This document shows positions 308 to 46,403 of a stretch of 64,000 nucleotides of DNA, piece after piece (positions within the stretch are counted from its first letter, which is position 1; each line of letters opens with the position of its first letter). The stretch is from the IMG/VR virus record IMGVR_UViG_3300028558_000791, positions 124,001 through 188,000 of that record; one strand, given 5' to 3'. Made by a program: the position numbers and the translations under genes. The notes under the pieces are model-generated. The model did not search any database. It saw nothing but the letters and a program-made list of their open reading frames with translations, and was not told the DNA's origin.

Positions 308-1270
308 ATGAAAATCCTGTCAGGCATACAGCCGTCAGGAACAATTCACATCGGAAACTATTTTGGAATGATCAAGCCACTGCTTGGTTTCCAAGACAAG
401 GGAGAAGTGTTTTGTTTCTTGGCGGATTACCATTCAATGACCTCATTGTTTGATGCAAAAGAACGTAAAGCAAATTCTATCGAAGCGGCCACTACTCTTT
501 TAGCTTGTGGTCTAGACCCCCTGAAGACAACCTTCTTCAAACAGTCAGACGTACCACAAGTAACTGAACTGGCCTGGATGCTGTCCACCGTAACTCCTAT
601 GGGATTACTAGAACGCTGTCATAGCTACAAAGATAAGACATCCAAAGGTATCTCGGCTAATCATGGGCTATTTGCTTATCCCGTATTGATGGCAGCAGAT
701 ATTCTCATCTACCAATCTAATCTTGTACCAGTTGGTAAAGATCAGATGCAGCACCTAGAAGTTGCCCGCGACATTGCTGTCAAGTTCAATACTGCTTATG
801 GAGATGTATTTACCCTGCCAGAACCATTCATTCAACAGCAAGTTGCTATTGTTCCGGGAACTGATGGCGGTAAGATGTCCAAAAGCCACGGCAATACACT
901 TGAAGTGTTTGGAGATGAGAAGCTTCTCAAAAAGAAGATAATGTCCATCACAATGGATAGTAGGTCTCCAACTGAGCCTAAACCTGACGCTAGCCAGAAT
1001 ACAGCTATTCAGTTGCTGAAATTGGTAGCTCCCGAAGATATTGCTTCTGATACAGAGACAAAGCTTAGGGAAGGTCAGCTTGGCTATGGTACGCTCAAGG
1101 GAATCCTGTTTGAGCATTGTACTAACTACTTTGCCAAACCACGTGAGTTGTACAACGATTTGAAGAATAACCAAGACTATGTTGAGGCTATTCTCGAAGA
1201 TGGGGCTGCTCGTGCAGCTTGTACAGCTCAATATACGATGAAGAACGTAAGGAAGGCTGTTGGTCTATGA
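308..1270 (+). CDS. trpS: tryptophanyl-tRNA synthetase
   Basis: SGIQPSG..HIGNY, YPVLMAADIL, VPVGKDQ..HLE, KMSKS class Ic motifs. Confidence 0.97.
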   Translation: MKILSGIQPSGTIHIGNYFGMIKPLLGFQDKGEVFCFLADYHSMTSLFDAKERKANSIEAATTLLACGLDPLKTTFFKQSDVPQVTELAWMLSTVTPMGLLERCHSYKDKTSKGISANHGLFAYPVLMAADILIYQSNLVPVGKDQMQHLEVARDIAVKFNTAYGDVFTLPEPFIQQQVAIVPGTDGGKMSKSHGNTLEVFGDEKLLKKKIMSITMDSRSPTEPKPDASQNTAIQLLKLVAPEDIASDTETKLREGQLGYGTLKGILFEHCTNYFAKPRELYNDLKNNQDYVEAILEDGAARAACTAQYTMKNVRKAVGL

Positions 1271-1461
1271 AGACTAAAGAATGGCTTCTAAATCGTAAAA
1301 GAGATTTGGAAGAAGAGCTTGAGGGTTACGACGAGCTAATAGAAGAGCTGAAAGAAGTTGAAAAAGCTCTTGCTGCTTTGGAACCCAAAAAGAAAAAGAC
1401 CGAGTGTAATGGATGCGCAAGTGGTTGTGATATCTGTCGCACTGGCCCTTACTACCGATGA
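1267..1461 (+). CDS. small coiled-coil protein with C-terminal CxxCxxxCxxC
   Basis: ATG overlaps trpS stop (ATGA); CNGCASGCDIC. Confidence 0.6.
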   Translation: MKTKEWLLNRKRDLEEELEGYDELIEELKEVEKALAALEPKKKKTECNGCASGCDICRTGPYYR

Positions 1462-1688
1462 AGGATATCATGTCAGATCAGGACGATGAAGATTTGAGGT
1501 TGCGTGATAAACTGGCAGCGGCTGCCCTTCCAGCTCTCATTCAGAGGTATAACGATAAAGTTGATAGTAAATGGATTGTAGATGGTGAGGTAACAGAACG
1601 ATTTGGTTATGATGCAGATCAGATAGCTATCTTGGCGTATAAGATAGCTGATGCGATGCGTAAAGCTAGATTACAAGCTTTTACTTGA
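1458..1688 (+). CDS. conserved phage hypothetical protein (LRD..AAAAL..AY.IADAM type)
   Basis: recognisable small phage protein pattern; ATGA coupling. Confidence 0.65.
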   Translation: MKDIMSDQDDEDLRLRDKLAAAALPALIQRYNDKVDSKWIVDGEVTERFGYDADQIAILAYKIADAMRKARLQAFT

Positions 1689-1696
1689 GAAAAACA

Positions 1697-2902
1697 ATGA
1701 AAACATTTGAAGACTTGGAACAACGTGGTCTAATTAAACAGACAACTAACACAGAGAAGTTACGTGAACTACTCAACTCAAATGTTCCAGTCACGTTTTA
1801 CATTGGGTTCGATCCGACCGCTGACAGTTTGCATGTAGGACATCTACTGCAAATTGTTACGGCCAAACGTTTAGCTGATGCGGGCCATCGCCCCATCATG
1901 CTAATCGGCGGGGCTACCGCATTGATCGGTGATCCCACCGGGAAGTCTGAAATGCGCAAGATGCTTTCTCACTCTGACATTAGAGTGAATGGTGAAGCTA
2001 TTGCTGGGCAGATTCAGCAGATAATGGGAAAAGATGTTGAAATCATTTCCAACATGTCATGGTTTGACGATGCAGATTTCCTAACTGTGTTACGCACCAT
2101 TGGTCCATTCTTTTCCGTCAATGAAATGTTACGTGCGGATTGTTTCAAGAGCCGCATGGAACATGGACTCTCTTTTCTAGAGTTCAACTACATGATTATG
2201 CAGGCGCAAGACTTTCGCATGCTTCATCTTGAAGAGGGTTGTGCCCTTCAGATTGGCGGAGATGATCAGTGGTCTAACATGTTAGCCGGCATTCATTTGA
2301 TCCATAAGAAGCATGGGCAAGAAGTATTTGGCCTAACGCTTCCTCTGTTGGTCAATTCAGATGGAACTAAAATGGGAAAGACTGAAAAAGGGGCGGTCTG
2401 GCTTGACCCAGAGAAAACTTCTCCATTTGATTTCTTTCAGTTCTGGCGTAATATTGAAGATGACAAAGTCAAGCAGTGTATCAACTTTTTTACGCATGAA
2501 GTTAATTCAGAGGGTTCTATTCTGTTAAACATCAATCAGCACAAAAAGTTTCTAGCTTTCGAAGTTACGAAACTTGTTCACGGCGAATCGGCAGCACAGC
2601 AAGCGCTCGAACAGGCGGAAGCCTTGTTCGAGAAACGAGACACCTCTGAATTGGAAGCAACGCCGATTCTAGAAGGAACTCACATCCTTGAAGCGATAAT
2701 CAAATGCGGCTTTGCGAAATCTCGCACTGAAGCAAGAAATTTGATTCTCAACAAAGGTATTACAGTTAACCAAGAAGTGCTAACTGATCCAACTATCATT
2801 GTCTCTAAAACTAATTTTGGAAACGAATTGATAATTCGAAAAGGTAAAAAGCATTTCTCTCGCTTGCTTATTGAGGATAAATGCCTAGACCAGAATCTGT
2901 AA
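1697..2902 (+). CDS. tyrS: tyrosyl-tRNA synthetase
   Basis: YIGFDPTADSLHVGH, QIGGDDQWSN, KMGKT, C-terminal S4 domain; ATG at 1697 preferred to TTG 1685. Confidence 0.97.
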   Translation: MKTFEDLEQRGLIKQTTNTEKLRELLNSNVPVTFYIGFDPTADSLHVGHLLQIVTAKRLADAGHRPIMLIGGATALIGDPTGKSEMRKMLSHSDIRVNGEAIAGQIQQIMGKDVEIISNMSWFDDADFLTVLRTIGPFFSVNEMLRADCFKSRMEHGLSFLEFNYMIMQAQDFRMLHLEEGCALQIGGDDQWSNMLAGIHLIHKKHGQEVFGLTLPLLVNSDGTKMGKTEKGAVWLDPEKTSPFDFFQFWRNIEDDKVKQCINFFTHEVNSEGSILLNINQHKKFLAFEVTKLVHGESAAQQALEQAEALFEKRDTSELEATPILEGTHILEAIIKCGFAKSRTEARNLILNKGITVNQEVLTDPTIIVSKTNFGNELIIRKGKKHFSRLLIEDKCLDQNL

Positions 2903-11857: not shown

Positions 11858-11922
11858 CCCAACGCTACCTTCATCTCCGTATGTGAGATATAGTTTTCTT
11901 GATAAGATTTTACGGAGATATT

Positions 11923-14935: not shown

Positions 14936-15157
14936 ATGTCTGAACTAGAACTTTTGAAACAAATTCATATCCTACAGACAGAAGAAATTCTTCTGTTAAA
15001 GAAAAGCCTGTTATCGCACGAAGAACAAGTACAGCACCTAAATGAATTACTTGTAATTCAAAACAAGATAATTGAATTGCAAAAACAAATGATAAAAGAT
15101 TTAACGCCTCAGGCTAAAGTGTCCCATCTTAGATTGGTAAAGAGAGAAAATGAGTAA
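14936..15157 (+). CDS. small coiled-coil protein
   Basis: heptad-rich 73-aa ORF. Confidence 0.55.
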   Translation: MSELELLKQIHILQTEEILLLKKSLLSHEEQVQHLNELLVIQNKIIELQKQMIKDLTPQAKVSHLRLVKRENE

Positions 15158-16307
15158 GCATCCTGTATTAGATTTGATTATACAAAAGAGTCCGCACCTA
15201 AGCTGGATGCAGGATAATACTGTCCTCTTGGTTCGCCACGGCTCTCACGCCTATGGTACCAACGTTGCCACCTCTGACGAGGACTTCAAAGGAGTTGCTA
15301 TCCCGACCAAGAAGTATTTCTTGGGAACCATGCATCGCTTTGAACAAGCTGAGTTGAAAGCCCCTGACCCGGATGCTGTTATCTATGATATCCGAAAGTT
15401 CTTCAACTTAGCTGCTGACTGTAACCCTAATATCATTGAAGTGTTGCACACCGATCCTTCTGACCATTTCTTGGTTACTCCGATTGGTCAGCAAATCTTG
15501 GACCACAAGGATGACTTCTTGTCCAAGAAGATCAAGTTCACCTTCATGGGTTACTCGGTTGCCCAACTCAAGAGAATCAAGACTCACAAGCGCTGGATCA
15601 TGAACCCACCTAAAACTCCTCCTACTAGGAAGGAGATGGGGTTGCCAGAGCAGACCTTGATTCCTCAAGATCAGTTGATGGCAGCCAACGCTGAAGTTCA
15701 GAAGGAGCTTGATAGGTTCCAGTTCGACTTCATGGAAGGTTTGGAAGAGTCTCAGAAGATTAGTATTCGAGGCACGGTCAACGAAATGTTGGCTGAGCTA
15801 AAGATTACATCTGACCAGCACTGGATGGCCGCGGCCCGTAAGATTGGTTTGGATGACAACTTCATTCATCTCATGCAGCTTGAGCGTGAATACGCAGGAG
15901 CTAAGCGAGAGTGGGATCAATACCAGAACTGGAAGAAGACTCGCAACCCAGCACGCTCTGCCCTTGAAGAGAAGTACGGCTATGATACGAAGCACGCTTA
16001 TCACTTGGTAAGATTGATTCGTATGTGTCGTGAGATTCTCATCACTGGTAAAGTGTTGGTGAAGCGACCAGACCGAGAGGAACTGTTGAGCATTCGTAAC
16101 GGTGCCTGGACTTATGATCAGTTGATTGAATTCGCTGACCGTGAGGAAAAGGAACTCAACGAATTGTATCTCACCAGTACGGCCCTTCCCAAGATGCCTG
16201 ACAAGGACAAGTTGGACCAGCTTTGTATTAGGTTGGTAGAAGAGGCCTTGGATTCAGAATTGAGGAGACGTTATCGTATGTATAAACACTTAGGTATTAG
16301 ACAGTAA
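15150..16307 (+). CDS. Pol-beta-superfamily nucleotidyltransferase (YcgL/RlaP-like)
   Basis: GSHAYG...SDEDFKG, NPNIIE, YDTKHAYHLVRL. Confidence 0.85.
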   Translation: MSKHPVLDLIIQKSPHLSWMQDNTVLLVRHGSHAYGTNVATSDEDFKGVAIPTKKYFLGTMHRFEQAELKAPDPDAVIYDIRKFFNLAADCNPNIIEVLHTDPSDHFLVTPIGQQILDHKDDFLSKKIKFTFMGYSVAQLKRIKTHKRWIMNPPKTPPTRKEMGLPEQTLIPQDQLMAANAEVQKELDRFQFDFMEGLEESQKISIRGTVNEMLAELKITSDQHWMAAARKIGLDDNFIHLMQLEREYAGAKREWDQYQNWKKTRNPARSALEEKYGYDTKHAYHLVRLIRMCREILITGKVLVKRPDREELLSIRNGAWTYDQLIEFADREEKELNELYLTSTALPKMPDKDKLDQLCIRLVEEALDSELRRRYRMYKHLGIRQ

Positions 16308-22101: not shown

Positions 22102-22497
22102 ATGCTTATCTTTCTCGGTATTGTATTAGTTATTGTTACATTCATAGTTGGTGCCGGAGCTACCCACGGTTATGCTAAACACCGTTGGCCTCCCTTAATT
22201 GTAAAGCGACAAGTCTATGTAACAGGTGAAGGCTGGGTAAATCAGGCCCAAGACGATAATAGCGCAAAAAGAATTGCCTCTACTATTTTTTGGCCTAGTT
22301 ATTGGATATTCATTTGGCCATTCACTAAAGTCAATGAAGTAACCTTTACGCATATCGAGAAAGAAGCCGCTTTGCAAGTTGCTAAGAATAAAACTCGTGT
22401 AGCAGACTTACAGGCTACACGAGAACAATTATCGGCCTCTAATGCTGAATTAGAGCGAGCCGAAGTGGAATTAGAAAAGGAACTCAGTAATGTCTGA
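22102..22497 (+). CDS. membrane protein with C-terminal coiled coil
   Basis: two hydrophobic segments, FWP motif. Confidence 0.65.
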   Translation: MLIFLGIVLVIVTFIVGAGATHGYAKHRWPPLIVKRQVYVTGEGWVNQAQDDNSAKRIASTIFWPSYWIFIWPFTKVNEVTFTHIEKEAALQVAKNKTRVADLQATREQLSASNAELERAEVELEKELSNV

Positions 22498-23425
22498 AGT
22501 AAAGATGGTTGTGGGATACCCGGCTTCGGGTAAGAGTACGGTTACTAAAGACCTTATCAAAAAAGGAGCCGTCTCCCTAAACAGGGATACCGAGGGCGGT
22601 ACCATCGTCAGCCTTCTACCTAAACTAGAGGCGCTCATCAAAGATGGCAAGGATGTTGTTCTTGATAACACATTTCCTACCATTGAAGTGCGTAAGCCTT
22701 TCATTGAGTTGGCTAAGAAGTACAATGCTGACGTTAGCTGTACGTTGATGGGGACTACCATTGAGGAAGCTCAGTTCAATGTAGTACAGCGAGCTATTAG
22801 TTTGATTGGTAAGTTTCCGACCCCGGAAGCCATCAAAGCTGCCAAGCATACCAATATCTTCCCTCCTACCGTCTTGTTCAAATACAAGAAGGAGTTTCAG
22901 AAGCCAACTGTAGAGGAAGGCTTCTCAAAGGTAGAGCTTCATAAGTTCGTCCGCCTGGATAACCCAGAGTTCACCAACAAGGCCATCATTGTGGACTATG
23001 ATGGAACTTTGCGTGAGTGTATCGGCGGCAATGAGAAGTTCCCGGTCTCCAAGGATCAGATTGAGATTAAGCCTGGACGAGCTAAGATTCTCCAAGCTTA
23101 CAAAGACAAAGGGTACCTTCTGTTGGGAATCTCCAATCAGAGTGGCGTTCACAAAGGCGAATTGAGTGAGCAGACCGCCATTGAATTGTTTGAGCACACT
23201 AACAAGGGGCTAGGTATTGATATTGAATATCGATTCTGTCCCCACCAGTCGGCACCAATTTCCTGCTATTGCAGGAAGCCAATGAATGGAGTCGGGGTTG
23301 AATTCATTCTCAAACACAAACTCCGTGCCAAAGACTGCATCATGGTTGGCGATATGACAACCGATAAGACATTCGCTGCCCGTTCTGGATTTCAATACGT
23401 AGACCAAGCAGAGTTTTTCAAATGA
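22490..23425 (+). CDS. polynucleotide kinase-phosphatase-like protein (P-loop kinase + HAD-IIIA)
   Basis: GYPASGKST, VLDNT; DYDGTL, SNQSG, CYCRKP, MVGD. Confidence 0.85.
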   Translation: MSEVKMVVGYPASGKSTVTKDLIKKGAVSLNRDTEGGTIVSLLPKLEALIKDGKDVVLDNTFPTIEVRKPFIELAKKYNADVSCTLMGTTIEEAQFNVVQRAISLIGKFPTPEAIKAAKHTNIFPPTVLFKYKKEFQKPTVEEGFSKVELHKFVRLDNPEFTNKAIIVDYDGTLRECIGGNEKFPVSKDQIEIKPGRAKILQAYKDKGYLLLGISNQSGVHKGELSEQTAIELFEHTNKGLGIDIEYRFCPHQSAPISCYCRKPMNGVGVEFILKHKLRAKDCIMVGDMTTDKTFAARSGFQYVDQAEFFK

Positions 23426-23718
23426 GAAAAAAGTTCAAAATTACTTTTGAAGTGGATTGTAATTATCCCCATATTGATAATGCTGTACCCATTAGATCAT
23501 CTACAAAAATGATAAAAGATTTTGAACAGTGGCTTAAAGATTGGACTAATAGTAGCGGTAAAGATATTATGCCAATTCTTTATGAGCCGGCTCGTGGAAA
23601 AACAGGCTCTAAGGGTGACTGGGAACATGCGCCAAATGGTACGGTAAAGGTAAAGATTGTACGAGATAAAGAAACTATTCTAGATACATGGTGGGATGTA
23701 TTATCTGATGATTTTTGA
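23422..23718 (+). CDS. hypothetical protein
   Basis: ATGA coupling; 98 aa. Confidence 0.6.
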   Translation: MRKKFKITFEVDCNYPHIDNAVPIRSSTKMIKDFEQWLKDWTNSSGKDIMPILYEPARGKTGSKGDWEHAPNGTVKVKIVRDKETILDTWWDVLSDDF

Positions 23719-23727
23719 GAGGCAATT

Positions 23728-24687
23728 ATGATTAAGGTAGAGATGTTAGTTGGAATCCCAGGTTCTGGGAAGTCCACGTATGCAAAACAGGTTGTAGCCA
23801 AGGATCCATCGAACTGGGTTCGCGTCAACAACGATGACCTTCGTGCCATGATGAATGGTAGCGTCTGGAGTGCAGACTACGAGAAGATGGTTACGGATGC
23901 CCGCAACTATCTTATCCGAGATGCATTGAAGCGCGGGAAGAACGTCATCATCGACAATTTGAATCTCAACCGTCGTCACTTCGATGATGTCTGTAAGATT
24001 GCCAAGTCAGTCAATGCCGACATCCAGGTTTTCGAGAAGGCTTTCTACATTGAGTTGGAAGAAGCCTTGGAGCGTAACGCTAAGCGTGAAGGCGCGGCTC
24101 GTGTACCTGATGATGTCATCAAGAAGTGGTGGAAGGAGTCTGGTAAGACTCAGTTCAAGTTTTTCAAGCCCCGAGTAGAAATCTACAAGGAAAGCAAGGG
24201 TAGTGCTCCTGCATTTGCTCCGCCTGAGTGGATTGAAGGTTTGTCTGAAGCAGTTCTCTGTGACTTGGACGGCACCCTTGCTTTGATTCATGGCAGAAGC
24301 CCGTACGATGCTTCTGATTGTGACGTCAAGGACTTGCCAAACATTCCGGTTATTGAAACCGTTCTTGCTCATTATAGGGCTGGTCGAAAGATTATCTTCT
24401 GTTCTGGGCGTGAAGACAAGTACCGACCAGAAACCATTAGGTTCATCGAGAAGCACTGCTTCGTTCCTCTGGCAACTAATCCTGGTGTGAACTCGTTTAG
24501 TTACCAGCTTCACATGCGCAAGACCGATGACTTCCGTAAGGATGCCATTATCAAGGAAGAAATCTATCAGAACGAAATTGAGGGACAGTACAACGTACTC
24601 TGCGTCCTCGATGACCGTGATCAAGTGGTTGAGTTTTGGAGAGCCAAGGGACTGACTTGCTTCCAAGTCGCGCCCGGCAACTTCTGA
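23728..24687 (+). CDS. pseT: T4 PseT-like polynucleotide 5'-kinase/3'-phosphatase
   Basis: GIPGSGKST, NNDDLR; DLDGTL, SGR, RKDAIIK, DDRDQVV..WR..GL.CFQV. Confidence 0.93.
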   Translation: MIKVEMLVGIPGSGKSTYAKQVVAKDPSNWVRVNNDDLRAMMNGSVWSADYEKMVTDARNYLIRDALKRGKNVIIDNLNLNRRHFDDVCKIAKSVNADIQVFEKAFYIELEEALERNAKREGAARVPDDVIKKWWKESGKTQFKFFKPRVEIYKESKGSAPAFAPPEWIEGLSEAVLCDLDGTLALIHGRSPYDASDCDVKDLPNIPVIETVLAHYRAGRKIIFCSGREDKYRPETIRFIEKHCFVPLATNPGVNSFSYQLHMRKTDDFRKDAIIKEEIYQNEIEGQYNVLCVLDDRDQVVEFWRAKGLTCFQVAPGNF

Positions 24688-26618: not shown

Positions 26619-26814
26619 GATGTTCAAAGAAAATGGTTTCCTCTCTGAAGAGGGTAATAAGGTTCTGCATTCATTTCACTATGGCCTAACTGAGATTATG
26701 GCCACGGCTGAAGTTCGTAATATGTCGGTGCAGGAACTGCAAGTCCTACAAGCCAATCTAGCATCCCTAGTTGGTACTACAATCTCTAATGCAATTCAGT
26801 CAAAGAAAGAGTGA
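26611..26814 (+). CDS. hypothetical protein
   Basis: 67 aa, overlapping its neighbours. Confidence 0.6.
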   Translation: MTKMFKENGFLSEEGNKVLHSFHYGLTEIMATAEVRNMSVQELQVLQANLASLVGTTISNAIQSKKE

Positions 26815-28064
26815 GTGTTATGTTGCTTGTCCAGAAGTATTTGGAAACACATACATTTGGAGACTTGGCGCGAGACCACGGTGTCTATGCGTCGTTCTCT
26901 AAGTCCGGTCACAAGTTCTCTCTGAACTACGATCAAATTGAAGCAAGGGAGTCAGATCCCTTGTCTCAGGAAACTCGCGGACTCATCTTGGCCGCAGAGG
27001 ATGGAAAGTCTTTCACCTCTCAGGCTCAGCAGGTCAATGGTCGTAACAACTACGACCATATCTCTCCGGGCAAGACTAAGATTCTTGCTTATCCAATGAA
27101 GCGTTTTTTTAATCATGGTCAGGGCTCTGCCGCTGATATTGATTGGTCTGATCCTAAGTTGGCCGTGCTGGAGAAGCTGGACGGAACCTTGTGCATTGTG
27201 TACTACGATACCTTCACGGACAAGTGGTGCATGGCAACTCGTTCTGTTCCGGAAGCTGACTTGCTGATGGATAATGGTATCTATACCTTCCGCACTCTGT
27301 TCGAGAAGGCACTAGTAGATACTACTGGCTATGAGTTCGATATCTTCACACGATCCCTAGACAAGGCTTACACTTACTGCTTCGAGTTGACAACCCCATA
27401 CAATCGTATCGTGGTTGAATACAAGAACAACGGTGTAACGTTGTTGGCAGTTCGTGGCCTGGTCACTTTACAGGAATTGGACTTCAAGCACCCTGTAGTT
27501 GATTTGCTTCCAACTAGTTTGCCGCTTGTACAGGGACACACGTATACTTCTGTGCAGGACCTTGTGGATTGGGTATCTTCATTGAACCCAATGGAGCATG
27601 AAGGTGTTGTTGTTCGAGACGGACAGTTCAATCGAATCAAGGTCAAGAACGCGGCCTACGTGGCTTACAACAAGGTACGCGATGCTTTGGCAACTTCACC
27701 ACGTAACATGGTAGAATTGATTCTGACAGAAAAGGATGACGATGTCATTCCTATGCTGCCAGAAGAGATTGTCAAGAATCTCCAGACCATCAAGGTTGGT
27801 ATTCAAAAGGTTATCAAGCAGCATGACGAAGCTTACTTGGCTATCAAGGCTGAGGCAGACAAGCTCATGCCGGGAGATAAGAAGACCTTTGCCGTTCTAA
27901 CTACCGTCACCTACAAGTCCCTGAACTTGTGGACGGCTCCATTCTTCCAGTTGTTCGATGGTAAAGCTTCGAATATGAAGGACTTTATCATGAAGTCTCG
28001 CCAGAAGGATGGTACCTGGGGTAACAACTTCCTAGATAAAATGCTAGAATTAGCAAAGCAATAG
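26811..28064 (+). CDS. T4 Rnl1-like RNA ligase
   Basis: ETRGLI, P.KRFFN, LEKLDG, FELT.P.NRIVV.Y, EGVVV, RIKVK; only gene in the window ending in TAG. Confidence 0.88.
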   Translation: MSVMLLVQKYLETHTFGDLARDHGVYASFSKSGHKFSLNYDQIEARESDPLSQETRGLILAAEDGKSFTSQAQQVNGRNNYDHISPGKTKILAYPMKRFFNHGQGSAADIDWSDPKLAVLEKLDGTLCIVYYDTFTDKWCMATRSVPEADLLMDNGIYTFRTLFEKALVDTTGYEFDIFTRSLDKAYTYCFELTTPYNRIVVEYKNNGVTLLAVRGLVTLQELDFKHPVVDLLPTSLPLVQGHTYTSVQDLVDWVSSLNPMEHEGVVVRDGQFNRIKVKNAAYVAYNKVRDALATSPRNMVELILTEKDDDVIPMLPEEIVKNLQTIKVGIQKVIKQHDEAYLAIKAEADKLMPGDKKTFAVLTTVTYKSLNLWTAPFFQLFDGKASNMKDFIMKSRQKDGTWGNNFLDKMLELAKQ

Positions 28065-37033: not shown

Positions 37034-37034
37034 T

Positions 37035-38869: not shown

Positions 38870-39432
38870 TATAAGCTCGAAGTTGGTATGGTTAGATATG
38901 GTTCTGGTACAACATCTGCCATTGTATAGTTACGTACTCCTGAGTTATGGACATGATAGGATTTGATTGATTTGCTAGGGTTAGTTACACCATAGCCTGC
39001 CTTATTAAACTCATAAGCTATTCTATTATCACAACCTCTAATTCCTAAAGTGAAATTACCGAAGACGCCCTCTACTTTGCCTTTTACAATCCAGGTATCT
39101 TGACTATCTGACCTGTCAAAAAATCTAACAAGAGCATCATTGCCTAGCCAGTCCCAACGACTTAGGGCGTACAATTGTTTGTGCTTCATATTGAGCGCTA
39201 AAGCAATCGTCTCATCAAAGAATATGTCAGAGTTACAAATGATATTGATGTCATCTGGTTCAGTTATCTTATTGATTTGTTGAAAGAAAAAATCATAGGT
39301 AGGTTTGCTAGCAGACTCTATTACGGTAGTGGTAATCAACTTATTAGCTAAGTTTCTCTGTAGACAGTAATCGATCTCTCTTTTGCGAATCGGATTTTTA
39401 TCTTCATAGTAGTTGTAGAATAATCTAATCAT
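38869..39432 (-). CDS. putative GT-A glycosyltransferase-like protein
   Basis: NSDIFFD, ALSRW, SQDTW, G..GCDN. Confidence 0.6.
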   Translation of the reverse strand: MIRLFYNYYEDKNPIRKREIDYCLQRNLANKLITTTVIESASKPTYDFFFQQINKITEPDDINIICNSDIFFDETIALALNMKHKQLYALSRWDWLGNDALVRFFDRSDSQDTWIVKGKVEGVFGNFTLGIRGCDNRIAYEFNKAGYGVTNPSKSIKSYHVHNSGVRNYTMADVVPEPYLTIPTSSL

Positions 39433-39433
39433 A

Positions 39434-40390: not shown

Positions 40391-42180
40391 TATACGCCCA
40401 CCAATTTCTGAACTGAAGCGACAAGCTTATCATTGTACTCACTATCAAACTTAGCAGGAGTCTTTGGTTTATCCATGAAAACAGATACCGCCTTGTGTAT
40501 GTCCGTAGCCACAGGGTAGGTAGAGTTGTTTTGTGAAATCATAACGGAACCATTCTGGTTTAGATAGGTTTGGTTGTTTGTAATGATAGGTAGTGATAGC
40601 GCACTAGCTAGGTTTAGAATACCTGACATGTAATATGTATTGGTGGCCATATCAACTACAGCTTTAGCTCCCATAAACAAAGCAGCGATACTACTATAAC
40701 CAACAGTGTCGGAAACAAATTCTGCGTAGGTAGGTAGTTTGACACGAGACCCAACTATGATAAGCTTACCGAATCTTTCTTCCCACGACTCTAGAAGAAT
40801 GCGAGTTATCTCTTCATCTTTTTCAAAGTATAAGAAATAATCAAATCTAATAGCGCTGGCAGCTAACATTGGCCATGGTTTCTCTACTCGTAAAACATTG
40901 GCTTCCGGTACGTGTCTCAATATCTCTTGCATATTGATTAGTGATGGTGTTAGAATAGTTTCACAGGCCCTAAACTTGTCTATATGTGCTTGTTGTAGAT
41001 TGCCTTGAAACCATTCTTCTACCCAAACTCTTTTGCTAGGTTTAAGGGTATCTAGAGAACACATTACTACGTTGGGCTCATCGAAAGATTTATTGAATCC
41101 CATCATGCTAGTTGCTTTAGAGGACACCACTAAATTAGGAAAGAAGGGAGCAATCTTCTTCATCCAAAGTCTGGAGTGTGGGCTATCTGGAAAGATGATT
41201 CCCGAGTTCTGATAAGTGGTTGGTGGCTCGTAAGTTTCGGGGGTCAGCAGCGCAAATTCTTTACTATTACGCATCACTTGAAAATTGAGCGTGTCGGACT
41301 TAGGTTCAACGTAGTTGCTCGACGTGTAGGTGTTGGACGTACCTGGATGCACCAGGCCCTCTGATATTATACGAGAGTGCATTGGCGGTCTAGGAGCAGA
41401 TGTCAATACAGTCGGAATACCACTACTCTGAATTGTAGAAACAAAAGTAGATGGTGGTGGAACAAAACCAAACGGAAAGTTAGGACCATTAGGTGGCGGC
41501 TGAACAACTACTGCTGGTTGGCTACCCACGTATGGTAGTGTAAGTCCAGCTTCGTTTTTGACACAGAACCAGATTCTTCTCTTATGGATATCGGTACTGT
41601 TGTCATTACGTTCGATCCAGTCATATTTGAACTCACTAGAGTTGAACTTATCTTTATCCATTCGTTTGAAAGTCATACCATAATTGGTTAGTAGTCTTTC
41701 AATATACGCTGCGCTTGGGCGAGACCCAGTTCCGTTAAATGCTAAATCATAAACTTCTTTGGCTTCCGGAATATGAATGATCTTGTTAGGATCATCAGAG
41801 TCACAGACTGCAGTTTCTAGAATCAGATATGTAGTAGAAGCGCAGGCGGCCTTGATATGTTCATCGATTGAAGCAAGATGACACACTAAACCTAAATCAA
41901 GAATCATATCGAACTTAGTTCCATGGAAAGGCCACGGTCCTTCTAAGTTGGCTCTTATTACCTTAACGCCTGGGAATTTTTTAGATACTACTTTGAGATG
42001 GTCTTGTCGAACATCTACAGCAGTTATGTCTGCACCTAAACGATATAGAACTCCACTTAAATCAGCATGCCCACAACCTAAATCGGCCACTTTCTTGTTG
42101 TAAAAGAATTTGTAGCCGAAATAATCTATGATGCCTTTGATACGCTTTGAATTCCAATCGAAGTATTTTCCGTCAAACAT
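40390..42180 (-). CDS. SAM methyltransferase fused via a Pro-rich linker to a degenerate GT-like domain
   Basis: ADLGCGH, FD.ILDLG..CH, LILET; C-terminal half uncertain. Confidence 0.7.
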   Translation of the reverse strand: MFDGKYFDWNSKRIKGIIDYFGYKFFYNKKVADLGCGHADLSGVLYRLGADITAVDVRQDHLKVVSKKFPGVKVIRANLEGPWPFHGTKFDMILDLGLVCHLASIDEHIKAACASTTYLILETAVCDSDDPNKIIHIPEAKEVYDLAFNGTGSRPSAAYIERLLTNYGMTFKRMDKDKFNSSEFKYDWIERNDNSTDIHKRRIWFCVKNEAGLTLPYVGSQPAVVVQPPPNGPNFPFGFVPPPSTFVSTIQSSGIPTVLTSAPRPPMHSRIISEGLVHPGTSNTYTSSNYVEPKSDTLNFQVMRNSKEFALLTPETYEPPTTYQNSGIIFPDSPHSRLWMKKIAPFFPNLVVSSKATSMMGFNKSFDEPNVVMCSLDTLKPSKRVWVEEWFQGNLQQAHIDKFRACETILTPSLINMQEILRHVPEANVLRVEKPWPMLAASAIRFDYFLYFEKDEEITRILLESWEERFGKLIIVGSRVKLPTYAEFVSDTVGYSSIAALFMGAKAVVDMATNTYYMSGILNLASALSLPIITNNQTYLNQNGSVMISQNNSTYPVATDIHKAVSVFMDKPKTPAKFDSEYNDKLVASVQKLVGV

Positions 42181-42212
42181 TATCTTCCAATCTTGATCTA
42201 ATTAGATTTTAT

Positions 42213-42965
42213 TCACATCGATGGACCATGATACGGAATAAAAACAGGTTTGATTCGGTATGTATAAGCGTAGCAGTTGTTTTGGAATTTTACTAAATTG
42301 TTCTTATGAGCGGCATCTTTGAATTCTCGATACCCTTCAGTAGCAACAACAGTTTCATCAAAATGATGTCCCTTGTCTTTTAGATAGCCCACTTCCCATC
42401 CAACTAACCTGGCCCTAAAGAAGAAATCGGCATCTTCCTCTCCATAGATTCCATAATCTGTAGTGAAGTAACCAATCTTTTTATGTAGGTCCCTATGGAA
42501 AACTGAACAGGCTGTTCCAAGGTTGCCAGCCTTCTTGAGTTGGAAAGTCTTATCATTCCTAGTAACTAGATCATAGTTGTCGTTTTCAAAACTCACACCA
42601 ATGGTAATTCTGTTACCTTCTTTGTCTTTGATTATGTCTGTACATTGAGACAGCCATTTATCGGGGAACTCAACGTCATTGTCTATAGTGGCAAGGAACT
42701 CATCCTCCGCCCCATACTTATTTGCCATTAGAAGACCTTGGTTTCTTCCCATAGCAATTCCTTTGTTTGTAGGATTGAAATGAATCTTACAATCAACTGA
42801 TAATTGTTCCGGTAGTTTTTCTAAAAACTCTTTTGTTCCATCAGTAGATCCATTATCTACAATCAATAATCTATATGGGCCATCAGTAGTTTTGAAAAAG
42901 TTATCAAACATTCGTTTTGTGAATTCGAGCCTGTTATAGGTTACTAGCATAATTGAAGTCGTCAT
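42213..42965 (-). CDS. family 2 glycosyltransferase
   Basis: VTYNR, VDNGSTDGT, GRNQG, DND, YGEEDAD; GAGG SD before ATG 42965. Confidence 0.9.
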   Translation of the reverse strand: MTTSIMLVTYNRLEFTKRMFDNFFKTTDGPYRLLIVDNGSTDGTKEFLEKLPEQLSVDCKIHFNPTNKGIAMGRNQGLLMANKYGAEDEFLATIDNDVEFPDKWLSQCTDIIKDKEGNRITIGVSFENDNYDLVTRNDKTFQLKKAGNLGTACSVFHRDLHKKIGYFTTDYGIYGEEDADFFFRARLVGWEVGYLKDKGHHFDETVVATEGYREFKDAAHKNNLVKFQNNCYAYTYRIKPVFIPYHGPSM

Positions 42966-43026
42966 GATATCCTCATATAACTTAAGGGTGAGCGGTGCGC
43001 CTTTCAACGCATATAAAAGGTGAATT

Positions 43027-43218
43027 ATGGATCCAAATGAAAAGAAAACCGTCAAAATTCCAGTTTGGGATCTGGAAGTGGATGAAATTATAGAGATGGA
43101 AATAGATCAAGACGCCCTAGATGCTATGGATAAAGCTGACAAAGAAGCTGAAGAGCGCTATGAAGAGGCTTGCAGACGTGACCGAGAAGAACTAAGATAT
43201 GTGAGGGATGATGACTGA
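43027..43218 (+). CDS. small acidic protein
   Basis: AGGTG SD; 63 aa. Confidence 0.6.
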   Translation: MDPNEKKTVKIPVWDLEVDEIIEMEIDQDALDAMDKADKEAEERYEEACRRDREELRYVRDDD

Positions 43219-44083: not shown

Positions 44084-44872
44084 ATGTCAAACACATTGAA
44101 AGACCGCGTTGAACGATACCAATCGGTCAGCGACCACAGATTACTCGACCGAGTACCAATTATCATTTGCGTCAACGGGCGAGGATTTTCCAAAGTAACT
44201 CAGTTGCTTGACAAGCCCTATTGTCCAAAATTTGCCGAATGCATTCTCTCCACAACTTTACGACTTTGCCAAGACGTCGAGGGTTCACTCTTTGCCTACC
44301 AGCACAATGATGAGATTGTTATTGTAGCTCGTAATGACCAGAAGGATGACACTACTCCTTGGTATGACAATAAGCTTCAGAAAATCTGCTCAGTTACTTC
44401 AGCTATTGCAACAATGCACTTCAATCAAATGGCAGCTAAGGTTGATTTGAATATCACTGGCGCCCCTATCTTTACATCTCAGATATTTGCCGTACCAACT
44501 CTTAGTGAGGCGGTTAATACTATCATCTACAAACAACAGCAGAATTTCCATACCTCGATTCAATCCGCTTGTTTATACGAGCTTATTAAGAAGTATGATA
44601 AGAACAATATCAAAGAGATGATGGCCGGATTGAGCGTGGATGAAAAGGTAGACCTACTTCATCAAGAGGTAGATATCAATTTCAATGACTATCCAGTTTC
44701 TTTTAGACGAGGAGCGGCTGCTTACAAGGTTCCTATTGTATCCGGGGACTCAATGAGAAATAAATGGCATCTCAATCTTGAGCCGCCAATATTTACCAAG
44801 GACCAGTCCTTCTTATCTAACATCTTTAAAAATGGCGCGGATATCTTTAGACAAGAAAGCTTTGGCCGGTAA
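44084..44872 (+). CDS. Thg1-like tRNA(His) guanylyltransferase / 3'-5' polymerase (divergent)
   Basis: L.DR...Y, II.VNGRGFSK.T, KPY, AYQHNDEI, WYD.K.QK..SV, FRRG. Confidence 0.8.
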   Translation: MSNTLKDRVERYQSVSDHRLLDRVPIIICVNGRGFSKVTQLLDKPYCPKFAECILSTTLRLCQDVEGSLFAYQHNDEIVIVARNDQKDDTTPWYDNKLQKICSVTSAIATMHFNQMAAKVDLNITGAPIFTSQIFAVPTLSEAVNTIIYKQQQNFHTSIQSACLYELIKKYDKNNIKEMMAGLSVDEKVDLLHQEVDINFNDYPVSFRRGAAAYKVPIVSGDSMRNKWHLNLEPPIFTKDQSFLSNIFKNGADIFRQESFGR

Positions 44873-44877: not shown

Positions 44878-45039
44878 ATGAAGAAGTGCTTTACGTTTCC
44901 CAATAAGAAACGATACAATACGGAGAAGGATGCCGACACGGCTATCTTATTAATTGACAACCGGAACCTCCGTGCTTATCATTGTAGTGGGTGCGACGGA
45001 TGGCACCTTACCTCAAATTTAAAAAATTATAGGGATTGA
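44878..45039 (+). CDS. small phage protein, Y.C..C.GWHLTS type (53 aa)
   Basis: KKRY.TE..A...RAYHCSGCDGWHLTS. Confidence 0.65.
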   Translation: MKKCFTFPNKKRYNTEKDADTAILLIDNRNLRAYHCSGCDGWHLTSNLKNYRD

Positions 45040-45063
45040 CACCTATCAATAAGTGGTTATAAT
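45036..45063 (+). promoter_or_regulatory. near-consensus sigma70 promoter for the tRNA cluster
   Basis: TTGACA-16-TATAAT ending 15 nt before tRNA-Thr. Confidence 0.75.
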
Positions 45064-45078: not shown

Positions 45079-45152
45079 GCTGGCTTAGTATAACGGCATT
45101 ATTCTTCCCTTGTAACGAAGAGAACCGAGTTCGACTCTCGGCGCCAGCTCCA
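45079..45152 (+). tRNA. tRNA-Thr(UGU)
   Basis: cloverleaf; loop CT-TGT-AA, GTTCGA T-loop, U73, encoded CCA. Confidence 0.9.
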
Positions 45153-45242
45153 CTGCTAGCGGGTTTATACCCTAGCCGCAATCATCCCTTCAGGAATATA
45201 GGTACGTATTTAACCTAGATGATTGCATGAGAATACAATTAA

Positions 45243-45317
45243 GCCCATGTAGTATAACGGTTATTACCCGTCTTTGGTAAAGACGAAAATTGAGTTCGAC
45301 TCTCAACTTGGGCTCCA
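45243..45317 (+). tRNA. tRNA-Thr(GGU)
   Basis: CGTCT-TT-GGT-AA-AGACG arm, U73, CCA. Confidence 0.92.
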
Positions 45318-45410
45318 GCGTCCTGTTTCACTAGTTTTCGGTTCAGTGAACAACATCTACTACTTCCTCAAAGTATGGATAGTTAATGGACGATTCTTTA
45401 AACCGAATAA

Positions 45411-45486
45411 GCCCGTGTAGCTCAGTTGATAGAGCACCTCACTAGTAACGAGGATGTCGGTGGTTTGATTCCACTCGCGGGCTCCA
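45411..45486 (+). tRNA. tRNA-Thr(AGU)
   Basis: GCCCGTG/CGCGGGC acceptor, CCTCA-CT-AGT-AA-CGAGG arm, U73, CCA. Confidence 0.88.
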
Positions 45487-45487
45487 A

Positions 45488-45706
45488 ATGTTTAAGACGA
45501 ACGTTTATGTAAGAGGTATTCGACAATCACCTACTTATTGGTACATTGCACATTCCACTTTGTTTTTCAGAACAGACAAAGAATCCGCCATCAAAATGCT
45601 GCATGTACATGATGTTGTAGAGATTGATAAATTTTTTCTAGGCGTCAGATATTCTAGTAAGTCATATGTAATTGAAATACCTGCTAACCAGCTCAAACTA
45701 AGCTAA
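45488..45706 (+). CDS. hypothetical protein
   Basis: 72-aa ORF starting 1 nt after a tRNA CCA. Confidence 0.55.
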   Translation: MFKTNVYVRGIRQSPTYWYIAHSTLFFRTDKESAIKMLHVHDVVEIDKFFLGVRYSSKSYVIEIPANQLKLS

Positions 45707-45775
45707 TGTCGTATAGTGGTATTACGCTGCCTTCGTAACGCAGTCACGTGAGTTCGATTCTCACCTTTAGCTCCA
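45702..45775 (+). tRNA. tRNA-Thr(CGU)
   Basis: CTGCC-TT-CGT-AA-CGCAG arm, GTTCGATT T-loop, U73, CCA. Confidence 0.9.
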
Positions 45776-46046: not shown

Positions 46047-46403
46047 GGGGATGACCAGGTTTCGACAGAGTAAAGAATTATTGAAATGATTCAGACCGAG
46101 GATGATTGCACCCTCGTAAATAAGTGATCGACGTATAAATGCAAACGATAATGCATTTGCAATGGCCGCCTAACGGCACCATTTGTTTTTAGATGAGATT
46201 GTCTTAGTAATCTAAAAGCACCAACTACGAAGGCTGGTCCAAATATTCGGCTACGGAGTATGCGGATGACGACAACAGTAGATAGCCTGAAAGAGTGAGT
46301 ATCTGACTTTGGCGCTGATGACTAAGTCCTTCAGCTAGGTCTGTGAATGAGTTTCAATGACAACGTATTTTGGACCGGGGTTCGATTCCCCGCATCTCCA
46401 CCA
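46047..46403 (+). ncRNA. ssrA: tmRNA, tag ANDNAFAMAA
   Basis: GGGGATG/CATCTCC-ACCA acceptor with G3:U70, TTCGAC 5' motif, GGTTCGATTCC T-arm; resume GCA at 46141 to TAA 46173. Confidence 0.95.

What the first reader, a model, noticed from the sequence alone, without database searches (positions are those of the whole stretch)
45079..45775. Complete four-anticodon Thr tRNA set including rare tRNA-Thr(AGU)
Seen: Thr UGU, GGU, AGU and CGU occur consecutively behind a near-consensus promoter. Their bodies are divergent, all have U73, and three have a 31-39 mismatch with C39 (C-C, A-C, C-C). Established: most bacteria use A34 only in tRNA-Arg(ICG), and 2-3 tRNAs suffice for the Thr box. Inference: one tRNA per codon may make decoding independent of wobble modification, or may replace host tRNA-Thr destroyed by a defence nuclease. 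The opened anticodon stem could aid evasion.
Basis: partly seen in the sequence, partly recalled or inferred. Interest (0 to 1): 0.65.

Follow-up and report, generated by a model that had tools for sequence, protein, structure and literature searches.

The report
Four-anticodon threonine tRNA array, huge phage
A 481-kb soil phage that carries about 58 tRNA genes has a promoter-driven row of four threonine tRNAs, one for each ACN codon; the A-starting anticodon is less rare in phages than supposed, but three of the four tRNAs share an unusual unpaired base in the anticodon arm that may protect them from a bacterial tRNA-cutting defence.

Summary
Four tRNA-Thr genes (UGU, GGU, AGU, CGU) lie at 45079-45775 behind a perfect TTGACA-16-TATAAT promoter. 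All have U73 and an encoded CCA, and three have an unpaired 31-39 with C39.

The window is part of a 480,838-bp virus record from a rhizosphere metagenome. That record has 57 tRNAs called by ARAGORN, a further degenerate Trp tRNA, a tmRNA, TrpRS, TyrRS and a T4-style tRNA repair set.

The array sits downstream of a Thg1-like gene and is conserved in about 13 related huge phages, with changing membership. AGU occurs in six relatives on two different tRNA bodies. One lineage has a second GGU in that slot instead. Thr is the only complete four-codon box.

AGU is not rare in viruses: at least 120 IMG/VR contigs carry it, but there it stands without GGU and with a normal 31-39 pair.

The distinctive feature is C39 opposite C31 or A31. 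It is found in 22 of 24 UGU, CGU and AGU tRNAs of the clade and in 0 of 12 GGU tRNAs. The PARIS nuclease AriB cuts E. coli tRNA-Thr UGU and CGU and needs U39, so evasion is plausible but untested.

A34 is probably unmodified and reads ACU, the phage's commonest Thr codon (46%).

The parts
44084..44872 (+). Thg1-like protein (tRNA 3'-5' nucleotidyltransferase family, 262 aa). It is the conserved left-hand neighbour of the Thr array.
   Evidence: Pfam PF04446 Thg1 at E 3.9e-18, 66 bits against a cut-off of 29.2. It was used to find 20 related loci at 64-93% identity.
45036..45063 (+). Sigma-70-type promoter, TTGACA-16 nt-TATAAT, preceded by an A/T-rich stretch.
   Evidence: 12 of 12 consensus matches. 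The promoter is conserved upstream of the first Thr tRNA in L002, L003, L004, L006, L007, L009 and L010.
45079..45152 (+). tRNA-Thr(UGU) with U73, encoded CCA and a C31.C39 mismatch.
   Evidence: ARAGORN; Rfam 42.7 bits; anticodon arm read.
45243..45317 (+). tRNA-Thr(GGU) with U73, encoded CCA and a paired U31-A39.
   Evidence: ARAGORN; Rfam 53.5 bits; near-identical orthologues in L002, L003 and L004.
45411..45486 (+). tRNA-Thr(AGU) of 'type A' body, with anticodon loop CUAGUAA, an A31.C39 mismatch, U73 and encoded CCA.
   Evidence: ARAGORN; Rfam 57.3 bits. Orthologues in L006, L009 and L010 show compensatory changes in the D and T stems and an invariant loop. The sequence is identical in runs X2 and X22.
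45702..45775 (+). tRNA-Thr(CGU) with U73, encoded CCA and a C31.C39 mismatch.
   Evidence: ARAGORN; Rfam 52.2 bits. All 8 CGU tRNAs of the clade have C39 opposite C31 or A31.
46047..46403 (+). One-piece tmRNA with tag ANDNAFAMAA, the conserved right-hand neighbour of the array.
   Evidence: ARAGORN; Rfam RF00023 at 142 bits. Also present in L006-L009, L017 and L019. Its 5' part has depth 2082 in a soil metatranscriptome.
48924..49255 (+). Two tRNAs with a CUA (amber-reading) anticodon, at 48924-48997 and 49183-49255. They belong to the same conserved RNA-gene neighbourhood.
   Evidence: ARAGORN and Rfam; present in nearly all relatives.
51455..51530 (+). tRNA-Arg(CCU), the conserved end of the neighbourhood.
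22490..24687 (+). Two polynucleotide kinase/phosphatase (Pnkp-like) genes at 22490-23425 and 23728-24687: the RNA end-healing enzymes.
   Evidence: Pfam AAA_33 with PNK3P, and HAD_PNKP at E 2.4e-47; NCBIfam matches.
26811..28064 (+). T4 RnlA (Rnl1) family RNA ligase: the tRNA sealing enzyme.
   Evidence: Pfam PF09511 at 47.4 bits against a cut-off of 28.3; TIGR02308 at E 3.2e-19, below the equivalog cut-off.
15150..16307 (+). RlaP-family nucleotidyltransferase of the 'RNA repair pathway'.
   Evidence: Pfam PF10127 at E 6.9e-16.
308..2902 (+). Tryptophanyl-tRNA synthetase (308-1270) and tyrosyl-tRNA synthetase (1685-2902).
   Evidence: TIGR00233 at 282 bits against a cut-off of 177, and TIGR00234 at 378 bits against a cut-off of 114.

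Best explanation
The four genes form a working, promoter-driven tRNA-Thr operon. It belongs to the near-complete tRNA complement of a ~481-kb soil or rhizosphere huge phage.

Shown:
- The phage has 57 ARAGORN-called tRNAs, plus a degenerate Trp tRNA, grouped by amino acid.
- It has no ThrRS and no TadA.
- The Thr array lies between a Thg1-like gene and a tmRNA, and this arrangement is conserved in a clade of huge phages.
- The AGU tRNA is kept with compensatory stem changes in diverged relatives and occurs on two unrelated Thr bodies.
- ACU is the phage's commonest Thr codon.
- C39 opposite C31 or A31 is near-universal in the clade's UGU, CGU and AGU tRNAs and absent from its GGU tRNAs.

Inferred:
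1. The tRNAs are transcribed early by host sigma-70 RNA polymerase and charged by host ThrRS through G1-C72, C2-G71, G35, U36 and U73.
2. A34 stays unmodified, because the loop CUAGUAA does not fit the UACG or UAMG motifs of bacterial TadA. The tRNA therefore reads mainly ACU by Watson-Crick pairing. With GGU, UGU and CGU, every ACN codon then has a cognate phage tRNA, and phage translation does not depend on host tRNA-Thr.
3. The change from U39 to C39, left unpaired, removes the U36-A-A-U39 element and alters the stem next to the 40|41 cleavage site used by Toprim anticodon-arm nucleases of the PARIS AriB type. The phage copies would then survive when host tRNA-Thr is cut. The phage's Pnkp-like, RnlA-family, Thg1-like and CCA-adding enzymes would repair whatever damage still occurs.
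For: - Genome context: a 480,838-bp virus record with 56 Rfam tRNA matches and 57 ARAGORN tRNAs plus a tmRNA. A terminase-like ORF is present.
- Amino-acid-wise clustering of the tRNA genes.
- No PF00587 (ThrRS-type core) and no PF14437; the only PF00383 hit is a Cdd-type cytidine deaminase.
- The array and its promoter are conserved in relatives.
- AGU bodies: type A (window, L006, L009, L010) are 80-91% alike, with covarying D- and T-stem pairs and an invariant loop. Type B (L002, L003) is closest to a UGU body.
- A34 is confirmed in independent DNA and in a metatranscriptome contig.
- Codon usage: ACT 46%, ACC 22%, ACA 21%, ACG 12%.
- TadA motifs UACG and UAMG (PMC11472039). An unmodified A34 Thr anticodon discriminates U over C by 10:1 or more in E. 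coli, and Mycoplasma tRNA-Thr(AGU) is unmodified (PMC11066159).
- The 31-39 mismatch occurs in 13 of 18 Thr tRNAs against about 10% of the other tRNAs in five genomes. By isoacceptor over 14 phages: UGU 9/10, CGU 8/8, AGU 5/6, GGU 0/12.
- Background pairing at 31-39 is 95.5% in unrelated viral arrays and 99% in the tRNAs of the bacterial loci fetched.
- None of 158 unrelated AGU tRNAs has C39.
- U39 after U36-A37-A38 occurs in 9 of 74 tRNAs in the clade against about 48% in unrelated viral arrays.
- AriB cleaves E. coli tRNA-Lys(UUU), Thr(UGU), Asn(GUU) and Thr(CGU) at 40|41. A U39-to-A change abolishes cleavage, and T5 tRNA variants rescue infection (PMC12409363).
- T5 tRNA-Thr(UGU) has G39. 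This phage's tRNA-Lys(UUU) reads UAAACC at positions 36-41, as the AriB-resistant T5 tRNA-Lys does.
- tRNA repair genes lie in the same window, and the genome has two CCA-adding-family genes.
Against: - The host is unknown. It is therefore not known whether its tRNA-Thr carries U39, whether it has a PARIS-like nuclease, or whether its TadA is unusually broad.
- ACT preference is the same in relatives with and without AGU (0.38-0.48 against 0.33-0.53), so codon usage does not predict who keeps AGU.
- Other NNT-rich boxes (Ala, Gly, Val, Ser) have no A34 tRNA.
- One lineage (L004, L005, L021) has GGU in the AGU slot.
- Evasion alone would be served by a paired non-U39, as in T5 (C31-G39) and in this phage's own Lys and Asn tRNAs. 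Why position 31 is never G is not explained and may point to a decoding or modification reason instead.
- RNA evidence comes from contigs of one metatranscriptome. These cannot show mature tRNA, its modification state or its level.
Confidence: 0.5

Rival explanations
1. Inosine route. The host TadA, or an unrecognised phage enzyme, deaminates A34, so the tRNA is Thr(IGU) and reads ACU, ACC and ACA. It would then be a functional duplicate or replacement of GGU, as in Lactobacillaceae and in most viral arrays, rather than an ACU specialist.
For: In 79 of 79 unrelated viral loci and 79 of 79 bacterial loci, AGU occurs without GGU nearby, so there it must cover ACC. Relative L006 has UGU, AGU and CGU but no GGU. 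Some bacterial TadA enzymes have widened substrate ranges (PMC11472039).
Against: The loop CUAGUAA has G35 and U36, which fit neither UACG nor UAMG. No TadA-type deaminase is found in the phage. In E. coli only 3 of 15 A34 orthogonal tRNAs were inosine-modified, and the Thr variant behaved as unmodified. The metatranscriptome contig reads A, not G, at position 34, which is weak evidence because it may be precursor RNA or DNA. In this phage GGU is also present, so an IGU copy would be largely redundant.
Confidence: 0.15
2. Pure supply and tuning. The array only raises decoding capacity for a Thr-rich, ACT-rich phage proteome after host shut-off. The 31-39 mismatch tunes ribosome affinity or modification of weak-anticodon tRNAs and has nothing to do with nucleases.
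For: Thr makes up 6.8% of codons and ACT is among the commonest codons. Huge phages generally carry large tRNA sets (PMC7162821). The mismatch is left unpaired rather than compensated, which evasion alone does not require. Mismatches also occur in this phage's Gln, Val and Pro tRNAs.
Against: The mismatch is isoacceptor-specific in a way that mirrors a known nuclease's target list (UGU and CGU yes, GGU no). U39 is depleted after UAA across several amino acids of the clade. The phage invests in a full tRNA healing and sealing set. Codon usage does not track the presence of AGU.
Confidence: 0.25
3. Evolutionary noise. AGU is a recent point mutant of a duplicated GGU or UGU gene in a fast-turnover array, neutral or on its way to loss.
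For: Array membership changes between close relatives, and the window and L002 (93% identical in the neighbouring gene) have different bodies in the AGU slot. Odd anticodons occur sporadically in the clade: Phe AAA, Leu AAG, Pro AGG, Ser ACU.
Against: Type A AGU is kept in four phages whose Thg1-like proteins are only 68-74% identical to the window's, with compensatory stem changes and an invariant anticodon loop. AGU also sits on a second, unrelated body. It is the commonest kind of viral A34 tRNA after Arg(ACG) in the loci sampled.
Confidence: 0.05

Closest known systems
tRNA complements of huge phages (Al-Shayeb et al. 2020, PMC7162821)
   Same: The genome is over 200 kb and carries dozens of tRNAs (up to 67 are reported), a tmRNA, aminoacyl-tRNA synthetases and enzymes for ligating tRNAs cleaved by host defences. 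All of these are present here.
   Different: This is a different clade: the best cultured terminase match is 27% identical.
[quoted passage not shown]
   Same: The isoacceptors are the same. A non-U base at position 39 next to the 40|41 cleavage site is shared: T5 Thr has G39, T5 Lys has A39, and here Thr has C39 or A39, Lys has A39 and Asn has C39.
   Different: T5 keeps 31-39 paired, whereas here the pair is broken (C.C or A.C). Here all four anticodons are supplied. Nuclease resistance has been shown for T5 and not tested here. The host and its defences are unknown.
tRNA-Thr(AGU) of Mollicutes and Lactobacillaceae/Leuconostocaceae (PMC8007984, PMC11066159)
   Same: A bacterial-type tRNA-Thr with A34. 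Unmodified A34 is documented in Mycoplasma.
   Different: In those bacteria AGU replaces GGU, and the same holds in the bacterial loci sampled here (0 of 79 with GGU nearby). Those tRNAs have a paired A31-U39, and A73 in the Lactobacillaceae, Weissella and Mesoplasma examples read. Here AGU stands beside GGU, with C39 and U73.
tRNA-Thr(AGU) in other viral tRNA arrays (IMG/VR)
   Same: A bona fide Thr(AGU) inside large tRNA arrays: at least 120 contigs, and 79 of the 80 examined were verified.
   Different: Those arrays have no GGU, often have AGU as the only Thr tRNA, and always pair 31-39.
T4 Pnkp/Rnl1 tRNA repair against the PrrC anticodon nuclease
   Same: Kinase-phosphatase and RnlA-family ligase genes are present in the same window.
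   Different: Activity and targets were not tested. Here repair is combined with a full replacement tRNA set.

Membership tests
Elongator tRNA-Thr (bacterial type) | Cloverleaf recognised by tRNA models, with a 7-nt anticodon loop carrying U33, NGU and A37 | tested here: met
   ARAGORN structures; Rfam RF00005 at 42.7-57.3 bits. The loops are CUUGUAA, UUGGUAA, CUAGUAA and UUCGUAA.
Elongator tRNA-Thr (bacterial type) | ThrRS identity elements G1-C72, C2-G71, G35 and U36 (E. coli set, from established knowledge) | tested here: met
   All four, and all 34 distinct Thr-type tRNAs of the clade, begin with GC and end with GC followed by U73 and CCA.
Elongator tRNA-Thr (bacterial type) | Aminoacylation with threonine | not testable with these tools
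   No phage ThrRS was found. Charging by the host enzyme is inferred.
I34 tRNA (TadA substrate) | A34 within the TadA loop motif: YUACGAA in E. coli, YUAMGRA in S. pyogenes | tested here: not met
   The loop is CUAGUAA, with G35 and U36 in place of C/A35 and G36.
I34 tRNA (TadA substrate) | A tRNA adenosine deaminase available from the phage | tested here: not met
   PF14437 gives no hit. The single PF00383 hit is a 138-aa Cdd-type cytidine deaminase. The host enzyme is unknown.
Phage tRNA that evades an anticodon-arm nuclease (T5/PARIS type) | Same isoacceptor as the nuclease's targets, with a changed base at the recognition or cleavage site (positions 39-41) | tested here: met
   UGU and CGU carry C39-G40, where E. 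coli has U39-C/G40. U39 after UAA occurs in 12% of tRNAs in the clade against about 48% in other viral arrays.
Phage tRNA that evades an anticodon-arm nuclease (T5/PARIS type) | Resistance to cleavage and rescue of infection on a defence-carrying host | not testable with these tools
   No host, no nuclease and no assay are available.
Phage tRNA that evades an anticodon-arm nuclease (T5/PARIS type) | Difference from the host's own tRNA at those positions | tested here: inconclusive
   The host is unknown. The exact type-A arm with C39 is absent from 185,579 species genomes, but that search tested only one arm sequence.
Huge-phage translation gene complement | Phage genome over 200 kb with dozens of tRNAs, a tmRNA, aaRS and tRNA repair genes | tested here: met
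Stop-codon-recoded phage (code 15 or code 4) | Open frames only under a recoded stop, or an excess of in-frame TAG or TGA | tested here: not met
   Under table 11, ORFs of 100 aa or more cover 92% of the genome. Only 8 TAG codons join long same-frame ORFs, against 40 for TAA and 25 for TGA. CUA- and UUA-anticodon tRNAs exist all the same.

The most novel reading that the evidence does not exclude
A whole clade of soil huge phages has remodelled the 3' side of the anticodon arm of its Thr (UGU, CGU, AGU), Lys and Asn tRNAs. It has removed U39, and in the Thr tRNAs it has deliberately left 31-39 unpaired. This would be a heritable counter-measure to a PARIS/AriB-like Toprim tRNase that is widespread in soil bacteria. 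The unmodified A34 tRNA would complete a modification-independent, one-tRNA-per-codon Thr decoding set, so that phage translation continues after all host tRNA-Thr is destroyed. If true, the 31.39 mismatch would be a sequence signature for predicting which tRNAs are under nuclease attack in uncultured phage-host systems.
Probability: 0.3. Interest if true: 0.7.

Novelty: new variant of a known kind. Interest (0 to 1): 0.5.

Why it matters
Phage tRNAs are now recognised as counter-defence tools, but the experimental cases are a few coliphage tRNAs.

This clade offers a natural comparative data set of about 14 phages and more than 36 Thr tRNAs. One position, 39, together with its unpaired partner, separates the isoacceptors that a known nuclease attacks (UGU, CGU) from the one it spares (GGU). 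That gives a directly testable prediction for in vitro cleavage assays, and a possible sequence signature for tRNA-targeting immunity in soils.

It also corrects a statement in the literature. A review reports ANN anticodons other than ACG as absent from phages (PMC8007984). Here tRNA-Thr(AGU) turned up in at least 120 viral contigs, and in this clade it stands beside GGU. The decoding role of A34 (unmodified or inosine) in phages is therefore an open, tractable question.

Tried and rejected
- Megablast of 8 kb around the array against 50,697 cultured phage records found no match.
- Exact search for the AGU arm with any base at position 34 found nothing in IMG/VR or in 185,579 species genomes.
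The host remains unknown. From memory, the tmRNA tags look proteobacterial; this was not tested.
- Phage TadA, ThrRS-type synthetase core (PF00587) and RtcB were all sought and not found.
- Stop-codon recoding was tested because of the CUA and UUA tRNAs, and no evidence was found.
- Cultured phages with tRNA-Thr similar to viral AGU tRNAs (Syn19, BRock, phiHQ, Xanthomonas X1, Lak-C1) all turned out to be UGU or GGU. I therefore found no cultured phage with AGU, but this was not an exhaustive search.
- Correlation of ACT usage with the presence of AGU among relatives: none.
- The spacers between the tRNAs hold no further tRNA-like remnants.
- A literature search for 'Thr-AGT' with 'phage' returned only unrelated papers. 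Rafels-Ybern 2018 is not held.
Full report
**1. The observation**

ARAGORN and Rfam agree on four tRNA-Thr genes on the + strand:
- UGU at 45079-45152
- GGU at 45243-45317
- AGU at 45411-45486
- CGU at 45702-45775

Each has G1-C72, C2-G71, U73 and an encoded CCA. A perfect TTGACA-16-TATAAT promoter lies at 45036-45063.

**2. What the window is**

The window is bases 124001-188000 of a 480,838-bp IMG/VR virus record. G+C is 43% and the standard code fits: ORFs of 100 aa or more cover 92%. The record has a terminase-like gene whose best cultured match is only 27% identical.

Public runs place it in rhizosphere and soil metagenomes.

ARAGORN finds 57 tRNAs and a tmRNA in the genome. A degenerate Trp(CCA) tRNA that ARAGORN missed brings the set to all 20 amino acids. 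The genes are grouped by amino acid: Ser, Val, Gly, Leu, His-Glu-Arg and Thr blocks.

The window itself encodes the following:
- TrpRS and TyrRS
- an RlaP nucleotidyltransferase
- two Pnkp-like kinase-phosphatases
- a T4 RnlA-family RNA ligase
- a Thg1-like enzyme, directly upstream of the Thr promoter

Two CCA-adding-family genes lie elsewhere in the genome. This is the translation and tRNA-repair repertoire described for huge phages (PMC7162821).

No ThrRS-type synthetase and no TadA-type deaminase were found. The one deaminase hit is a Cdd-type cytidine deaminase.

**3. Is one tRNA per codon a general design?**

It is not. Thr is the only four-codon box with all four anticodons. Leu-CUN, Ser-UCN and Arg-CGN have three, Ala, Gly and Val have two, and Pro has one.

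Other A34 genes in the genome are Arg(ACG), a Phe(AAA) and a second AGU-anticodon tRNA. That second tRNA has a non-Thr acceptor stem (A1-U72, C73, G37) and is conserved in three genomes.

**4. Relatives**

The Thg1-like protein retrieved 20 IMG/VR loci at 64-93% identity. Four large relatives carry 52-64 tRNAs each.

The order Thg1-like gene, promoter, Thr tRNAs, tmRNA, CUA tRNA(s), Arg(CCU) is conserved, but the Thr membership varies:

| Thr tRNAs in the array | Loci |
|---|---|
| UGU, GGU, AGU, CGU | window, L002, L003, L009 |
| UGU, GGU, GGU, CGU | L004, L005, L021 |
| UGU, AGU, CGU | L006 |
| UGU, GGU, CGU | L007, L008 |
| AGU, UGU, GGU | L010 |
| GGU only | L011-L015, L018 |
| UGU only | L019 |

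On a tree of all Thr bodies with position 34 masked, AGU sits on two separate Thr-type bodies:
- Type A: window, L006, L009 and L010, 80-91% alike.
- Type B: L002 and L003, closest to a UGU body at 80%.

The non-Thr 'AGU2' lineage is a third carrier of the anticodon.

Type A shows compensatory changes in the D and T stems and an invariant CUAGUAA loop.

The window and L002 are 93% identical in the neighbouring gene, yet they hold different bodies with the same anticodon in the same slot. The anticodon, not the body, appears to be what is kept. The GGU in that slot in L004, L005 and L021 is a third, unrelated body.

A34 is not an assembly error. An independent rhizosphere metagenome contig matches 45269-45590 exactly. 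A 584-nt contig from a soil metatranscriptome holds the whole AGU tRNA without a difference, joined through a different spacer to a CGU tRNA.

In that RNA run only the tRNA and tmRNA genes and one stretch near 46.7 kb are covered. The tmRNA 5' part reaches depth 2082. This suggests transcription, but contigs cannot prove it.

**5. How rare is AGU?**

The literature reports ANN anticodons other than Arg-ACG as absent from bacteria. The stated exceptions are Leuconostocaceae (Thr-AGU, Leu-AAG), some Firmicutes and Mollicutes. The same review reports them as absent from phages too (PMC8007984; PMC11066159).

A pattern scan contradicts the phage part. Of 80 loci examined, 79 hold a bona fide Thr(AGU), mostly inside arrays of 10-30 tRNAs.

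In 185,579 species genomes the same pattern is dominated by Lactobacillaceae and Mesoplasma. There are also tRNA arrays on contigs of soil and aquatic MAGs.

In all 158 of these cases there is no GGU nearby and 31-39 is a normal pair. So AGU as such is ordinary for viral arrays, where it seems to replace GGU.

Within the clade, what stands out is AGU beside GGU, as in the window (L006 has AGU without GGU), and above all the unpaired C39.

**6. The 31-39 mismatch**

In five genomes of the clade, 13 of 18 Thr tRNAs are mismatched at 31-39, against about 10% of the other tRNAs. Counts by isoacceptor over 14 distinct phages:

| Isoacceptor | Mismatched at 31-39 | Notes |
|---|---|---|
| UGU | 9 of 10 | C39 in 7 |
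| CGU | 8 of 8 | all C39 |
| AGU (Thr-type) | 5 of 6 | |
| AGU2 | 3 of 3 | |
| GGU | 0 of 12 | all paired |

Position 31 is C or A and never G. The single transition that would restore a pair has not been fixed in any lineage, so the open pair looks selected.

Background pairing at 31-39 is 95.5% in unrelated viral arrays and 99% in bacterial loci. In that small viral sample, 7 of 27 Thr UGU and CGU tRNAs are also mismatched, which hints at a wider phenomenon.

**7. Link to a known defence**

AriB is the Toprim nuclease of PARIS. It depletes E. coli tRNA-Lys(UUU), Thr(UGU), Asn(GUU) and Thr(CGU) by cutting between positions 40 and 41. All targets share U36-A-A-U39.

A U39-to-A change abolishes cleavage of tRNA-Lys. 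The T5 Lys, Thr and Asn tRNA variants together neutralise PARIS (PMC12409363).

T5 tRNA-Thr(UGU) has C31-G39.

In this clade the isoacceptors with C39 are the AriB targets UGU and CGU, plus AGU, which E. coli lacks. GGU, which is not a target, is untouched.

The phage's tRNA-Lys(UUU) reads UAAACC at positions 36-41, like the resistant T5 tRNA-Lys. Its Asn(GUU) tRNAs have C39 or G39.

U39 after U36-A37-A38 occurs in 9 of 74 tRNAs in the clade, against about 48% in unrelated viral arrays.

With the healing and sealing genes in the same window, this makes nuclease pressure a reasonable reading. It rests on analogy. The host, its tRNAs and its defences are unknown, and non-independence among related phages inflates the counts.

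A further Thr-specific toxin exists. [quoted passage not shown] So all Thr isoacceptors are known targets of some bacterial weapon.

**8. A34: unmodified or inosine?**

Bacterial TadA edits A within UACG in E. coli and Klebsiella, or UAMG in S. pyogenes (PMC11472039). The loop here is CUAGUAA.

Unmodified A34 in a Thr anticodon reads U over C by 10:1 or more in E. coli. Mycoplasma tRNA-Thr(AGU) is unmodified.

ACT is 46% of the phage's Thr codons. I therefore favour an unmodified ACU reader.

The preference for ACT is clade-wide and does not track the presence of AGU, so supply alone does not explain who keeps the gene.

**9. Verdict**

The finding is real, and the context makes it more ordinary in one respect and more interesting in another.
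- More ordinary: this is a huge-phage tRNA complement, and AGU is common in viral arrays.
- More interesting: a conserved, isoacceptor-specific unpaired C39 mirrors the target list of a known tRNA-cutting defence.

It is a new variant of a known kind. Mechanistic claims beyond the anatomy and its conservation are inferences. The assays that would settle them are listed under the next steps.

Noticed in passing
window 46047-46403: A one-piece tmRNA with tag ANDNAFAMAA sits directly after the Thr array. Relatives have tags such as ANDNAFAPLALAA, ANDFAFAEAA and ADESAFAMAA. The 5' part of the gene appears at depth 2082 in a soil metatranscriptome, about 100-fold above the neighbouring tRNAs.
   Followed up: partly
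window 48924-48997 and 49183-49255; genome 50073-50149: Two tRNAs have the amber-reading anticodon CUA and are conserved in nearly all relatives. One tRNA elsewhere in the genome has the ochre-reading anticodon UUA. TAG ends only 12 of 425 long ORFs, yet there is no excess of in-frame TAG and table 11 fits. What these tRNAs do, and which amino acid they carry, is unexplained.
   Followed up: partly
genome 45791-45866 (outside the window); orthologues at L023:5869-5944 and L028:7120-7193: A second tRNA carries the AGU anticodon but has a non-Thr acceptor stem (A1-U72, A2-U71, C73), G37 and the same A31.C39 mismatch. It is conserved in three genomes with compensatory T-stem changes. Its amino-acid identity and role are unknown.
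   Followed up: partly
genome 41709-41784 (outside the window): A tRNA-Phe(AAA) stands beside Phe(GAA). A review (PMC8007984) reports A34 as universally missing from the Phe/Leu split box. The G002 orthologue has an 8-nt loop instead, so this may be an unstable or non-canonical tRNA. Relatives also show Leu(AAG), Pro(AGG) and Ser(ACU).
   Followed up: partly
window 15150-16307, 22490-24687, 26811-28064: A T4-style tRNA repair set is present: an RlaP nucleotidyltransferase, two Pnkp-like kinase/phosphatases and an RnlA-family RNA ligase. The genome also has two CCA-adding-family genes at 229261-229659 and 258639-259010.
   Followed up: partly
window 308-1270 and 1685-2902: The phage encodes tryptophanyl- and tyrosyl-tRNA synthetases, both above the NCBIfam equivalog cut-offs. 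The genome's only Trp tRNA is degenerate: it scores below the Rfam threshold and ARAGORN misses it.
   Followed up: partly
window 33269-43055, minus strand: A sugar-modification cluster is present. It holds GDP-mannose 4,6-dehydratase, an NAD-dependent epimerase, a DegT-type aminotransferase, glycosyltransferases and a methyltransferase-domain protein. This suggests modification of a glycan or of DNA or the virion.
   Followed up: no
genome 35998-37912 (L001:4-1917): A 473-aa ORF is followed by a 138-aa cytidine deaminase, just upstream of the first large tRNA block. By eye the 473-aa ORF looks like a Ro60/TROVE protein with a vWA-like C-terminus; it was not scanned against any family library. 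A Ro-like protein in a phage rich in tRNAs could point to non-coding-RNA quality control.
   Followed up: no
window 11899-13041; 4849-6639: An adenylosuccinate synthetase (PurA-like) gene and a DUF2201 metallopeptidase/vWA gene lie here. They are auxiliary metabolic or unknown functions.
   Followed up: no
L044-L123 (IMG/VR) and L208, L211, L218, L241 (MAG contigs): Unrelated viral tRNA arrays very often use Thr(AGU) in place of Thr(GGU). In 7 of 27 of their Thr UGU and CGU tRNAs, 31-39 is mismatched, against 4.5% of all their tRNAs. Prevotella phage Lak-C1 carries a tRNA-Leu(AAG) (L168).
   Followed up: partly
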